64,000 nt of DNA from Botryllus schlosseri (taxonomy: Eukaryota): NCBI GenBank assembly GCA_051294905.1, contig CM119384.1, forward strand, positions 15,810,001 to 15,874,000, in the 5' to 3' direction. Every line of letters starts with the position of its first letter. Positions within the stretch are counted from its first letter, which is position 1. A program made the position numbers and the translations under genes. This document shows, in pieces, positions 12,701-59,412 of the stretch. The notes under the pieces were generated by a model. It was not told where the DNA came from and ran no database searches. It saw only the letters and a list, made by a program, of their open reading frames with translations.

Positions 12701-15700
12701 TTGGAACAAAATTGGTTATCGCGATCTGAAGCATTAGTCAGAGCGTCTGAAAACGCACCAAAAATCCCAAGTGCACATGGCTAGTGCAGTTAAATATAAA
12801 TTGTTTGGCAGAGTAAATGTAATGTCGCAGCTCAATGAAAGTTATCGCGTATCAGTCTGCAAGCACAATGAGCTTGTAGATAAGAATAGGCATGTTCTCT
12901 CTCGGGTGATTGATGCCATTAAATTTATTGGAGTTCATGAATTGCCCCTTCGAGGCCACGATGAGAAGGAATGCTCTCTCAATAGGGGGGTATTTTTGGA
13001 TCTAATTAAATACACGGCTTCCATTGATAGCATTTTGCGCGAACATCTCGACACCGTGACAGTAGCTAAGGGTACCTCAAAGACTATTCAAAATGATGTG
13101 CTTGATTCGATATATCACATCTATCTACAGCATTTGTTTACCGAGATTGTTGACGCTGAATTTCTATCTATTCAGTCTGACGAAACAACTGACATTACAA
13201 TGAATGAAACATTTGTTACCGCACTTCAAGTCACGCCACCGGCAAACCTCTCGCGGCACCTACGTTAAAAATCATTGTTTACGGGAAATTCATGTGGCCA
13301 TCATGAACGTTGAAAAACGCTACTGTGACATCATATTGATAACAAGTCGCTTGCGGCCCTTGCCCCACCACCCGATATTGTCACGAGCCGCCACTGATAT
13401 TTTTGGTGACTGACCAGAATTACTCAGCTGTTTATTTCGAAGCCACAATAGGTACGAGTTGTTAGTTACTTACGTTACACCCCATGTAGACTGTATGTGT
13501 GTCTCTCTACGTCTTTTGGTCTTACTCTGTACGCCACACCCCAACCCCTTTGCTTTATCAATATAATTACACTTGTACATTGTACAATGCACATTGCACA
13601 TATGCATACCATAATGTGTAGTGTGTACCCGATCACTCAATCGTTGTGCGTTTTACCGAGGCTCCTCCATTCTTATATCACAAGTATATTCACCACAAGC
13701 GGTGATCGGACCTTACAGCTTACGTGGTCGTAAAATAGAATGAAGTACCGGTCATCTAATAGGAATGTAGCTCTGTTCTATAAACTGTTCACAGTGCCCA
13801 TTACTCATATAACCAACCCTCATGTATGATTTTTAAATCGGACGAATATCAGTTATACGTTTATATTACTCGTCAACAATTGGAACAGGCTCAAATTGAA
13901 TATCATGGATGAGTACGTGGGTATTGTATTGCATCACAATTTGTTTCAACTTTTGAGGTTTTGCATTCCATCCTGTATTTTGGCTGATAATCATATACTG
14001 GGGATATACCTGCATAATTTAGCCATTCTGCGTGTGAGTGAGCTATAGGCCTACAACACTTTTTTATGTGTACCATATATTCAACTCTGATCCTCCTTCC
14101 TATTTAAAACAGCTAGGAAGACTTTGAATCATGCCTCGTACCGGTACTTCGAAAATTCAACTTGACTTGACTCTTGAATTGACTTGACTCGAGTCACTTT
14201 AAAAAACCGAGTGACTCGAGTCGCCTTCGATAATCCGATAGACTTGACTCGAGTCAAAATGTGTAATGACTCAAGAGGCTTTGTGATTCGAAGGTAGCAA
14301 ATGGGTCCCAACACTGGTCAGGGTCTCTATACTTTATTTTGGCCCTAAATGCACCCCGTAATGTCAGAAATTGAACCCTTTCTCTAGTGAGTTTAGAGGC
14401 TCTGACTATCTATATCTGGCAACAACCGAAGAAACCCTAACATTATAATATTATATGACTTAACTTCTTCTTATCACAAATGTGATTCCAGAGGATCCAA
14501 AGCCCACTGAAAAACCTTCAACAACAATATCAACAACAGTAGGGATCATTGATGACAACCCAACAACGGCCATGCAAATGCCCAGTGAATACCCCACAAC
14601 TGCAGCGGAAGTGAATCCGACAGTCGCCGTAACTCCAACAGCGCCAGTTGTTGATCCTACAACACCAATTGTCACAAGCCAAGAACCGCCTACTACGCAA
14701 GTGGATTCAACTACAGATAGTGTGGAGACAGTTGCTGAGGATGAGAGATTTGATTGCTACCCCGATAGTGCTGCTGTTACACAAGAAATGTGTTTAGAAA
14801 GAGGGTATGTCTCGTCAGTTTTCGATTACCCGACATTAAAGTAATTAGGAATTTGATTTCTTTTTTGTATAAAATCATCATTTCAAATCATCAAAATTCA
14901 ATGTCGAAATGTTATTTTTAAATGTAATATCACCCCACAACTTGATAAATGCATAGTCTTATTAAGTTCCATATTTGCAAACTTTATTGATACCTGCATC
15001 CCTATGTTAGAGTCACCAATTGAAAATGGACTATAAGATCAATGCCATTTAAATAATATTGATTTAATCGACAATCATAGTTGATCATGGTTGGCGAATT
15101 CATCCTTAGGCATTACATGTATATCTGCTTTTATGCGCATGGTTACATATGTTATATTGAATGTTGTAGAAGTCTTATAATTGCCTTCCAATATGTTTCG
15201 AAATATACTAGTTCACACCATTGTGTATATGTATATGTATCTTTATACTGTATATAATTATATACATTTCTATGGAAGATATAGCCACCCATTGTCAGAG
15301 GCAATATTACGGACACAATTTCGCGAAAAGGAATCCTGAGAATATGATTTTCTAATCCTTGTCTCTACATACAGGTGTCGATGGGCTGGTGTGAGCGTTT
15401 CGGCACCCAGCTGTGTGTATCAGAGTGGGAACATGTACCAGATAAGTGGTGGACCGTCTGTCAGTCCCAGCATTATTACAAGCAACCTTGAGAGGTCGGA
15501 ATATGGCACAAACCAGACTCACTTTGGTGAACAGTTCTCTACACTTACCATTGAGACCACTTTTGTGTCCAGTACAACTCTGCGGATTAAGGTACATAAA
15601 ATGATAACTGATATTACTGAACTGAGCTGAAGTGAAGACATAAATAATGATTAAACTCATCGCACTCCAACAGATCAGTGTTTTGATGACATATACTTGG

Positions 15701-59412: not shown

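What the first reader, a model, noticed from the sequence alone, without database searches (positions are those of the whole stretch)
14740..59412. Reversed SI/MGAM architecture: three Ct-type modules followed by one Nt-type module (Ct-Ct-Ct-Nt)
Seen: modules 1-3 read [32 protein letters not shown] (26 residues between VWP and PD), while module 4 reads [11 protein letters not shown] (5 residues), a difference of exactly 21 aa. Modules 1-3 also have GMFSRDQ, YGVHPY, FQL(C/S)[15 protein letters not shown] and DPAISGNE. Module 4 has [21 protein letters not shown] and QQYHALIG. Established: vertebrate SI and MGAM are ordered anchor-stalk-Nt-Ct; the 21-aa insertion forming extra +2/+3 subsites marks the Ct unit; the module-4 motifs match my recollection of NtSI/NtMGAM. 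Inference: the Nt/Ct split predates this lineage and the units were assembled in the opposite order (permutation or independent fusion), placing the long-chain-preferring units near the membrane and the Nt-type unit at the tip.
Basis: partly seen in the sequence, partly recalled or inferred. Interest (0 to 1): 0.9.

Follow-up and report, generated by a model that had tools for sequence, protein, structure and literature searches.

The report
Sea-squirt gut glucosidase, reversed module order
This is a real, transcribed sea-squirt gene for one giant membrane-anchored starch-digesting enzyme with four active units, whose two unit types sit in the opposite order (Ct-Ct-Ct-Nt) to vertebrate sucrase-isomaltase and maltase-glucoamylase (Nt-Ct), so this pairing of unit types was either built twice or rearranged.

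Summary
The + strand from 9723 to 59412 carries one gene. My model has 76 exons, GT-AG at all 73 checked introns, and one open frame of about 3,659 aa.

- **Layout:** short tail, one membrane helix, Ser/Thr/Pro stalk, then four complete GH31 modules, each with intact catalytic motifs.
- **Module types:** modules 1-3 carry the CtMGAM-type 21-aa insert, including its Trp. Module 4 lacks it.
- **One gene:** a single exon (49138-49246) encodes the end of module 3 and the start of module 4's trefoil. RNA contigs from two studies carry exactly the predicted joints, so module 4 is not a separate gene.
- **Phylogeny:** in a tree of 69 modules, module 4 falls in the Nt-type family (100/98) and not in the single-module clade that NCBI names GAA-like. 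True GAA is not in the tree and is excluded by PDB scores only. Modules 1-3 group with vertebrate Ct units, weakly in the tree but strongly by the shared insert.
- **Taxon:** the genome is an ascidian. Styela clava has a colinear 67%-identical Ct-Ct-Ct-Nt protein. Ciona and Clavelina have Ct-Ct-Nt with the same junction motif. About 135 vertebrate models that start with an Nt unit are Nt-(Ct)n.

The order is therefore reversed in all four ascidians examined. The orthologues are already in RefSeq, but I found no paper describing the reversed order. Another note, s1-278714, covers the same stretch. Whether the order arose by independent fusion or by permutation is unresolved.

The parts
9723..9770 (+). 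Exon 1: start codon and first 16 residues of the cytoplasmic tail, followed by a GTAAGT donor
   Evidence: The ...EMDIE|EP... join matches ...NMEIEEP... at the N-terminus of the Styela orthologue. Not checked with reads.
10471..10612 (+). Exon 2: rest of the tail plus the single membrane helix (type II signal-anchor), ending in a phase-1 donor
   Evidence: The only stretch between 9700 and 14480 with 20-residue Kyte-Doolittle hydropathy above 2.2. Splice sites. 44% identity to the anchor of Styela P0227.
14492..14804 (+). Exon 3: Ser/Thr/Pro-rich stalk and the first half of module 1's P-type trefoil
   Evidence: The phase fits exon 2 (G + AG gives one codon).
14737..27706 (+). Module 1, Ct-type GH31 unit (19 exons, about 880 aa)
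   Evidence: Insert. GH31 Pfam hit on exon 22195-22371, 81 bits.
19985..20138 (+). Module 1 VWP...PDF stretch holding the 21-aa Ct-type insert with its Trp. An intron (20048-20105) lies inside the insert.
   Evidence: Aligned residue by residue to human CtMGAM 3TON, 71.9 bits.
27573..27706 (+). Bridging exon: end of module 1 plus the start of module 2's trefoil
28097..39025 (+). Module 2, Ct-type (insert at 32867-32929 and 33693-33725)
38892..39025 (+). Bridging exon: end of module 2 plus the start of module 3's trefoil
39951..49246 (+). Module 3, Ct-type (insert at 43457-43519 and 44242-44274)
   Evidence: Joints 46847|46911, 47036|48002, 48140|48204 and 48359|49138 are seen in RNA contigs.
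49138..49246 (+). Ct-to-Nt bridging exon. One exon encodes the last strands of module 3 (...FEIKW), a 7-residue linker, and the first Cys of module 4's trefoil ([10 protein letters not shown]).
   Evidence: Sequence and splice phases. Both flanking joints (48359|49138 and 49246|49498) are present in RNA contigs of runs X1 and X4. The junction motif is conserved in Styela, Clavelina and Ciona.
49498..59412 (+). Module 4, Nt-type GH31 unit (18 further exons, about 854 aa including the bridging-exon part), ending at the stop codon 59410-59412
   Evidence: PDB scores. Tree. GH31 Pfam hit on exon 56176-56337, 62 bits.
54536..54568 (+). Module 4 [11 protein letters not shown]: no insert
22062..22079 (+). 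HWLGDN acid/base motif of module 1. The same motif lies at 36002-36019, 45277-45294 and 56248-56265 in modules 2-4. The nucleophile motif WI|DMNE is present in all four modules and is split by a phase-0 intron at the same place in each.
59498..59503 (+). AATAAA, 86 nt after the stop codon: candidate poly(A) signal
   Evidence: Sequence only.

Best explanation
This is the ascidian counterpart of the vertebrate brush-border alpha-glucosidases SI and MGAM. It is one gene encoding one polypeptide of about 3,659 aa. An N-terminal signal-anchor helix holds it in the membrane and a Ser/Thr/Pro-rich, probably O-glycosylated, stalk lifts it off the surface. It carries four complete GH31 units, each made of a trefoil, an N-terminal sandwich, a barrel and two C-terminal sandwiches. 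The three units nearest the membrane are Ct-type. They have the 21-aa insert in subdomain b1 whose Trp builds the +2/+3 subsites in mammalian CtMGAM, so they should prefer longer maltooligosaccharides. The outermost unit is Nt-type and should prefer short substrates. All four keep the catalytic nucleophile, the acid/base residue and the -1 subsite residues, so the protein should release glucose from dietary alpha-glucans at four sites. The order Ct...Nt is shared by the four ascidians examined, which span three orders, and is the reverse of the vertebrate Nt-(Ct)n order. Both unit types are old families that exist as separate single-module genes in amphioxus and hemichordates. I consider independent fusion in the tunicate stem and in the vertebrate stem the most likely origin (about 55%). 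Shown here: gene structure, transcript continuity across the module 3/4 junction, unit types, and conservation of the order in ascidians. Inferred: membrane topology, glycosylation, substrate preferences, gut expression and the mode of origin.
For: - Gene model: 74 exons, all GT-AG, one frame with a single terminal stop. N-terminal exons, supported by the Styela orthologue.
- Transcript: a 2,087-nt RNA contig of run X4, and contigs of X1 from another study, carry 12 joints identical to the model, including both sides of the Ct-to-Nt bridging exon.
- Unit types: the insert aligns with vertebrate Ct units, amphioxus P0225, hemichordates P0181 and P0192, and P0061, and with human CtMGAM including the Trp. 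The orthologous Styela module 1 scores CtMGAM 876, NtMGAM 767, GAA 704 bits. Styela module 4 scores NtMGAM 855, NtSI 846, CtMGAM 698, GAA 681 bits. Window exons give the same ranking.
- Tree: with the insert columns removed, the Nt-type family (25 rows, including window module 4) splits from the rest at 100/98. The Ct-type rows form one clade in the best tree, and tunicate Ct plus vertebrate Ct also form one clade.
- Catalytic motifs: all intact in all four modules.
- Conservation: Styela P0227 is colinear over 3,547 aa at 67% identity and is Ct-Ct-Ct-Nt. Clavelina P0255 and Ciona P0256 are Ct-Ct-Nt. The junction motif is shared by all four. In a survey of about 190 multi-module proteins, CCCN and CCN occur only in these four.
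- Role of the insert: PMC12805851.
Against: - Support for a Ct-type clade is weak once the insert columns are removed (18/56, and 67/35 for tunicate plus vertebrate Ct). The i6 single-module clade and the protostome multi-module clade sit in the same unresolved region.
- Module 4 and its tunicate orthologues are long branches. They attach to ambulacrarian sequences, not to vertebrate Nt units.
- No true GAA sequence could be brought into the tree. GAA is excluded by PDB scores only.
- No full-length transcript was seen. Only 5.8 kb was laid with reads, and the 5' exons rest on sequence and on the orthologue.
- No enzymology or expression site is known for any tunicate member.
Confidence: 0.85

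Rival explanations
1. One fusion, then permutation. The common ancestor of tunicates and vertebrates already had a fused Nt-Ct gene. A tandem duplication (Nt-Ct-Nt-Ct), followed by loss of the outer units, gave Ct-Nt in tunicates, and the Ct unit was then multiplied.
For: Tunicate and vertebrate Ct units are sisters in the best tree. Tunicates are the sister group of vertebrates (established knowledge). Some mammalian gene models read NCN or NCNC. They look like merged tandem genes, which shows that such arrays exist. Chordate monophyly of Nt units is not rejected (AU p = 0.089).
Against: An exclusive tunicate plus vertebrate Nt clade is rejected under LG+G4 (AU p = 0.0067), and the mixture-model tree puts tunicate Nt with ambulacrarians. 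This could be a long-branch artefact. The type II anchor and stalk would have had to move onto a Ct unit. No intermediate was seen.
Confidence: 0.3
2. Module 4 is a separate downstream gene, or the joint is an assembly artefact, and only looks fused in the raw sequence.
For: Tandem GH31 genes are common. Amphioxus has a head-to-head Ct pair, and mammals have MGAM next to MGAM2.
Against: There is no stop, start, signal peptide or anchor between modules 3 and 4. One exon spans the boundary. RNA contigs from two studies are spliced across it. Three other ascidians have colinear proteins with the same junction motif.
Confidence: 0.02
3. Module 4 is a GAA-like or other generic GH31 unit that merely lacks the insert (the ancestral state), and modules 1-3 acquired a similar insert on their own, so the Nt and Ct labels do not apply.
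For: Lacking the insert is shared by Nt units, GAA and most GH31 enzymes, so the insert alone cannot define Nt. The Ct clade has weak branch support without the insert columns.
Against: Module 4 is inside the Nt family at 100/98, apart from the clade that NCBI names GAA-like. It scores about 170 bits higher against NtMGAM than against GAA. The insert of modules 1-3 matches vertebrate Ct units in length, position and motif, D(Y/F)P..(V/I)..(D/N)....W(D/E).Q...YRAYAAF.
Confidence: 0.04

Closest known systems
Vertebrate maltase-glucoamylase (MGAM/MGAM2), for example rat MGAM2 P0001 (3,615 aa, Nt-Ct-Ct-Ct)
   Same: Type II anchor and stalk. Four GH31 units, each with a trefoil. One Nt-type unit plus three Ct-type units carrying the 21-aa insert. 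44-49% identity per unit. All catalytic motifs are the same.
   Different: The order of unit types is reversed. In the rat protein the Nt unit is next to the membrane; here the Ct units are. The rat Ct copies arose within mammals, and the ascidian copies arose within tunicates.
Vertebrate sucrase-isomaltase (SI)
   Same: Same overall design. Module 4 shares the IFTRD...YGHQTF motif with NtSI (isomaltase), 52 bits on one exon.
   Different: SI is Nt-Ct, or Nt-Ct-Ct in amphibians and reptiles. Nothing here tests sucrase or isomaltase specificity. The RefSeq name 'sucrase-isomaltase, intestinal' on the Ciona orthologue is an automatic label.
Ascidian orthologues already in RefSeq: Styela clava 'maltase-glucoamylase-like' (P0227), Ciona intestinalis 'sucrase-isomaltase, intestinal' (P0256), Clavelina lepadiformis (P0255)
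   Same: Same anchor, same Ct...Nt order and same junction motif. P0227 is 67% identical and colinear.
   Different: Ciona and Clavelina have two Ct units, the second with a shortened 15-aa insert (20 residues between VWP and PDF). Styela and this genome have three near-identical Ct units, all related to the first Ciona unit.
Single-module Nt-type and Ct-type GH31 genes of amphioxus and hemichordates (P0177, P0225, P0009, P0181)
   Same: They belong to the same two families as the units of this protein. P0181 is the best outside match to modules 1-3.
   Different: One unit per gene, not fused.
Lysosomal acid alpha-glucosidase (GAA)
   Same: Same fold family, and a trefoil plus GH31 unit.
   Different: Lowest-scoring of the human paralogues for both unit types. 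Soluble and single-unit.

Membership tests
Glycoside hydrolase family 31 (alpha-glucosidase clade) | Match to the GH31 catalytic barrel profile (PF01055) | tested here: met
   Exons 22195-22371 (81 bits) and 56176-56337 (62 bits) exceed the 23.5-bit cut-off.
Glycoside hydrolase family 31 (alpha-glucosidase clade) | Catalytic nucleophile Asp (WIDMNE) and acid/base Asp (HWLGDN) in every unit | tested here: met
   Both motifs are present in all four modules, together with (I/V)(S/T)RST(F/Y), RNHN and D-I-(D/E)-Y-M.
SI/MGAM-type brush-border alpha-glucosidase | N-terminal type II signal-anchor followed by a Ser/Thr-rich stalk | tested here: met
   One hydrophobic helix in exon 2 and the stalk in exon 3, both conserved in Styela. 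Topology itself is inferred.
SI/MGAM-type brush-border alpha-glucosidase | Two or more tandem GH31 units of two types (Nt and Ct) on one polypeptide | tested here: met
   One reading frame. Spliced RNA across the Ct/Nt boundary.
SI/MGAM-type brush-border alpha-glucosidase | Unit order: anchor, stalk, Nt, then Ct | tested here: not met
   The order here is anchor, stalk, Ct, Ct, Ct, Nt.
SI/MGAM-type brush-border alpha-glucosidase | Expression on the gut brush border; maltase, glucoamylase, sucrase or isomaltase activity | not testable with these tools
   The RNA runs are coded and their tissue is unknown. No enzymology.
Ct-type unit (CtMGAM/CtSI) | 21-aa insert in subdomain b1 with the Trp that forms subsites +2/+3 | tested here: met
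   Modules 1-3 have 26 rather than 5 residues here, with a Trp aligned to the Trp of human CtMGAM's insert. Role of the insert from PMC12805851.
Ct-type unit (CtMGAM/CtSI) | Forms a clade with vertebrate Ct units | tested here: inconclusive
   Present in the best tree but weakly supported (18/56 for all Ct-type rows, 67/35 for tunicate plus vertebrate Ct). Similarity scores favour Ct.
Nt-type unit (NtMGAM/NtSI) | Forms a clade with vertebrate Nt units, apart from Ct units and other paralogues | tested here: met
   The split is supported at 100/98. PDB scores rank Nt well above Ct, and Ct slightly above GAA. True GAA is not in the tree.
Nt-type unit (NtMGAM/NtSI) | Direct orthology to the vertebrate Nt unit (sister position, as the species tree predicts) | tested here: inconclusive
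   The best tree puts tunicate Nt with ambulacrarians. The exclusive tunicate plus vertebrate clade is rejected (p = 0.0067), while chordate monophyly is not (p = 0.089), under a simple model. Long branches may mislead.

The most novel reading that the evidence does not exclude
The pairing of a short-chain (Nt-type) and a long-chain (Ct-type) alpha-glucosidase on one membrane-anchored polypeptide arose twice. It arose once in the tunicate stem as Ct...Nt and once in the vertebrate stem as Nt...Ct, from genes that were still separate in the chordate ancestor. This would be convergent gene fusion, implying a real selective advantage to tethering the two unit types, whichever one is next to the membrane.
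Probability: 0.5. Interest if true: 0.7.

Novelty: new variant of a known kind. Interest (0 to 1): 0.6.

Why it matters
SI and MGAM are textbook digestive enzymes and drug targets. Their Nt-Ct layout is usually explained as one ancient tandem duplication followed by a whole-gene duplication.

The closest living relatives of vertebrates carry the same two unit types in the reverse order, while amphioxus and hemichordates keep them as separate genes. Two things follow:

- The Nt/Ct split is much older than the fused gene.
- The fused layout was either assembled twice or rearranged.

This gives a natural experiment on whether unit order and distance from the membrane matter for function. It also supplies a set of diverged Ct-type and Nt-type units for structure-function work on chain-length preference. 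Finally, it warns that automatic names such as 'sucrase-isomaltase, intestinal' on tunicate proteins hide a different architecture.

Tried and rejected
- **Profile search with a scaffold.** I searched with the mollusc protein as scaffold plus 15 window exons. Most alignment columns were gaps, so the profile collapsed to about 44 positions. It still returned the Styela orthologue, which became the key lead, but it was a poor search.
- **AU test with the mixture model.** The test of the tunicate plus vertebrate Nt clade did not finish in two runs. A first direct IQ-TREE attempt timed out. The result reported comes from a faster LG+G4 run on 32 rows and is weaker for that reason.
- **True GAA in the tree.** I could not obtain a true GAA sequence. 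The vertebrate clade named 'lysosomal alpha-glucosidase-like' scores higher against NtMGAM than against GAA, so it is not GAA. GAA is excluded by PDB scores only.
- **Linked Nt and Ct genes in outgroups.** I looked for a linked Nt/Ct pair that could explain a read-through fusion. The amphioxus Ct-type gene sits head-to-head with a second Ct-type gene, not an Nt gene. The hemichordate locus shows no neighbour within 10 kb.
- **First spliced models.** The first models of the C-terminal sandwich domains of modules 1-3 contained spurious mini-exons, because the rat reference is too diverged there. I replaced them using module 3 as the reference.
- **Literature.** Five searches found nothing on tunicate SI/MGAM architecture. 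The library covers open-access papers and bioRxiv only, so a blank is not proof of absence.
- **The window's own protein.** It was not found in the protein collection, so this genome appears to have no deposited model for the gene.
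Full report
**1. What is in the sequence**

A six-frame motif scan finds four GH31 units on the + strand. VWP is followed by 26 residues before PDF at 19985, 32867 and 43457. At 54536 it is followed by 5 residues (GETHH) before PDY. An all-against-all comparison of stop-free segments shows the modules are colinear. 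Modules 2 and 3 are the most alike.

**2. Gene model**

I wrote a spliced protein-to-DNA aligner. I ran it first with the rat MGAM2 units as reference, then with the window's own modules as reference.

- The curated model has 74 exons from 14737 to 59412. Every intron is GT-AG and the frame is one 3,514-aa reading frame with a single terminal stop.
- Upstream, exon 1 (9723-9770) has an ATG, 16 codons and a GTAAGT donor.
- Exon 2 (10471-10612) holds the only strongly hydrophobic 20-residue stretch in the region.
- The 5' part of exon 3 (14492-14736) is Ser/Thr/Pro-rich. These three pieces join in phase.
- In total there are 76 exons encoding about 3,659 aa. Reading from the N-terminus, these are a tail, a signal-anchor, a stalk and four modules.
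- AATAAA lies 86 nt after the stop codon.

**3. Are modules 3 and 4 one gene?**

Between them there is no stop, start, signal peptide or anchor. Exon 49138-49246 encodes the last strands of module 3, a 7-residue linker and the first part of module 4's trefoil. Its splice phases fit both neighbouring exons. The Ct-to-Ct boundaries are built the same way (27573-27706 and 38892-39025).

I laid four RNA runs on 46600-52400.

- One 2,087-nt contig of run X4 carries the model's joints from 46847|46911 to 52324|52381.
- Several contigs of X1, from another study, carry many of the same joints.
- Both runs include 48359|49138 and 49246|49498.
- Depth is zero in the introns.

**4. Unit types**

- *Similarity, orthologue.* Module 1 of the colinear Styela orthologue scores CtMGAM 876, NtMGAM 767, NtSI 743 and GAA 704 bits. 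Its module 4 scores NtMGAM 855, NtSI 846, CtMGAM 698 and GAA 681 bits.
- *Similarity, window exons.* These agree. Exon 51754-51951 scores NtSI 52, NtMGAM 45, GAA 30.5 and Ct 28.7. Exon 56176-56337 scores Nt 71/68, Ct 53 and GAA 51. Exon 19859-20047 scores CtMGAM 72, GAA 36 and Nt 29, with the insert aligned residue by residue, Trp included.
- *The insert.* In a 69-module alignment it is clearly homologous in the tunicate leading modules, vertebrate Ct units, amphioxus P0225, hemichordates P0181 and P0192, and P0061. I read P0061's label as the Aurelia genome project, from memory. PMC12805851 confirms that the insert is specific to CtMGAM and that its Trp binds at +2/+3. It also reports a kcat/Km ratio for maltopentaose over maltose of 12 for the Ct unit against 1.0 for the Nt unit.
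- *Tree.* I used IQ-TREE with LG+C20 by PMSF on 834 columns, with the insert columns removed. The Nt-type family has 25 rows: vertebrate Nt of SI and MGAM, amphioxus, ambulacrarian and lophotrochozoan single-module proteins, and the last module of all four tunicates. It splits from everything else at 100/98.
- *The other side of the tree.* This side is poorly resolved. The 22 Ct-type rows are one clade in the best tree at only 18/56. Tunicate plus vertebrate Ct is one clade at 67/35.
- *The 'GAA-like' clade.* The single-module vertebrate clade that NCBI names 'lysosomal alpha-glucosidase-like' is not GAA. It scores higher against NtMGAM than against GAA. I could not bring true GAA into the tree.

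**5. Which organism, and is the order conserved?**

A weak profile search happened to return Styela clava 'maltase-glucoamylase-like'.

- It aligns with the window protein in one 3,547-residue stretch at 67% identity. Its inserts are 26, 26, 26 and 5 residues long.
- A search with it found Clavelina lepadiformis and Ciona intestinalis proteins of about 2,730 aa, with inserts of 26, 20 and 5.
- All have an N-terminal anchor. All share the Ct-to-Nt junction motif RWE(V/M)..(A/E)W followed by the trefoil Cys. This points to one fusion in the ascidian stem.
- Other notes of this scan also call the genome an ascidian.

I then classified every module of about 190 multi-module proteins by its best non-tunicate reference.

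| Pattern | Count | Where |
|---|---|---|
| NC | 55 | vertebrates |
| NCC | 43 | vertebrates |
| NCCC | 31 | vertebrates |
| NCCCC | 4 | vertebrates |
| NCCCCC | 3 | vertebrates |
| homotypic arrays (NN, NNN, oo, ooo, and longer) | 38 | echinoderms, molluscs, annelid, arthropod, tardigrade |
| CC, CCC, CCCCC | 7 | vertebrate models lacking the Nt unit, probably partial |
| NCN, NCNC, NCCNC, CNC | 5 | four mammalian models and one unnamed entry; they look like merged tandem genes |
| CCCN or CCN | 4 | the window and the three ascidian proteins only |

**6. Gene structure and history**

- The three Ct modules have identical exon lengths and phases. The exceptions are first-exon length and small length differences in three other exons.
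- Eight intron positions are shared by all four modules, including one inside WI|DMNE. Seven are Ct-specific, one of them inside the insert. Eight are Nt-specific. Both unit types therefore descend from one intron-bearing ancestor and then diverged for a long time.
- Window modules 1-3 cluster together (100/93), as do Styela modules 1-3 (100/100). Both groups are nearest to module 1 of Ciona and Clavelina. This indicates either concerted evolution or parallel triplication.
- A 729-nt tract spanning four exons and three introns is 89% identical between modules 2 and 3, against 77-84% for most other exons. This agrees with note s1-278823.

**7. Origin**

Separate Nt-type and Ct-type genes exist in amphioxus and hemichordates. 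Under LG+G4, an exclusive tunicate plus vertebrate Nt clade is rejected (AU p = 0.0067). Chordate monophyly is not rejected (p = 0.089). Tunicate branches are long, so I treat this as a lean, not a proof: independent fusion about 55%, one fusion followed by permutation about 30%.

**8. Novelty**

The orthologues are in RefSeq under automatic names. Five literature searches found no description of the reversed order. I therefore file this as a new variant of a known kind. It is a solid and moderately surprising evolutionary observation, not a new kind of system.

Noticed in passing
window 12418-13265 (+), inside intron 2 of the gene: Two adjacent open frames with a zinc-finger-like start and a DUF4371 match (42 bits). 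They look like the remnant of a hAT/ZMYM1-like transposase.
   Followed up: partly
window 35570-36296 versus 44850-45571: A 729-nt tract covering four exons and three short introns is 89% identical between modules 2 and 3, above the 77-84% of most other exons. This fits gene conversion (note s1-278823).
   Followed up: partly
window 3855-4002 and 6590-6949 versus 22584-23126: Short translated similarities between upstream sequence and an intron of module 1, probably a dispersed repeat.
   Followed up: no
window 3279-4070 (-): A 263-aa open frame with only a sub-threshold LINES_N match (17.6 bits against a cut-off of 25). Nature unknown.
   Followed up: partly
L001 1-4912 (-) and 10001-22480 (+) (Branchiostoma belcheri): Two single-module Ct-type GH31 genes lie head to head. 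The neighbour has a signal peptide and the [15 protein letters not shown] and DIDYMDRQIDF motifs.
   Followed up: partly
P0176, P0183, P0186, P0202 and relatives: A single-module vertebrate and invertebrate clade (VWPP....FPDY) that NCBI names 'lysosomal alpha-glucosidase-like' scores higher against NtMGAM (922 bits) than against GAA (770 bits). It forms its own well-supported clade, so the name is misleading.
   Followed up: partly
P0303, P0307, P0253, P0262, P0259: Four mammalian gene models and one unnamed MetaClust entry (P0259) have unit orders NCN, NCNC, NCCNC or CNC. They are probably adjacent tandem genes merged by automatic annotation.
   Followed up: no
P0255 and P0256, module 2: In Ciona and Clavelina the second Ct unit has a shortened insert (20 instead of 26 residues between VWP and PDF). 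Clavelina lacks the Trp.
   Followed up: no
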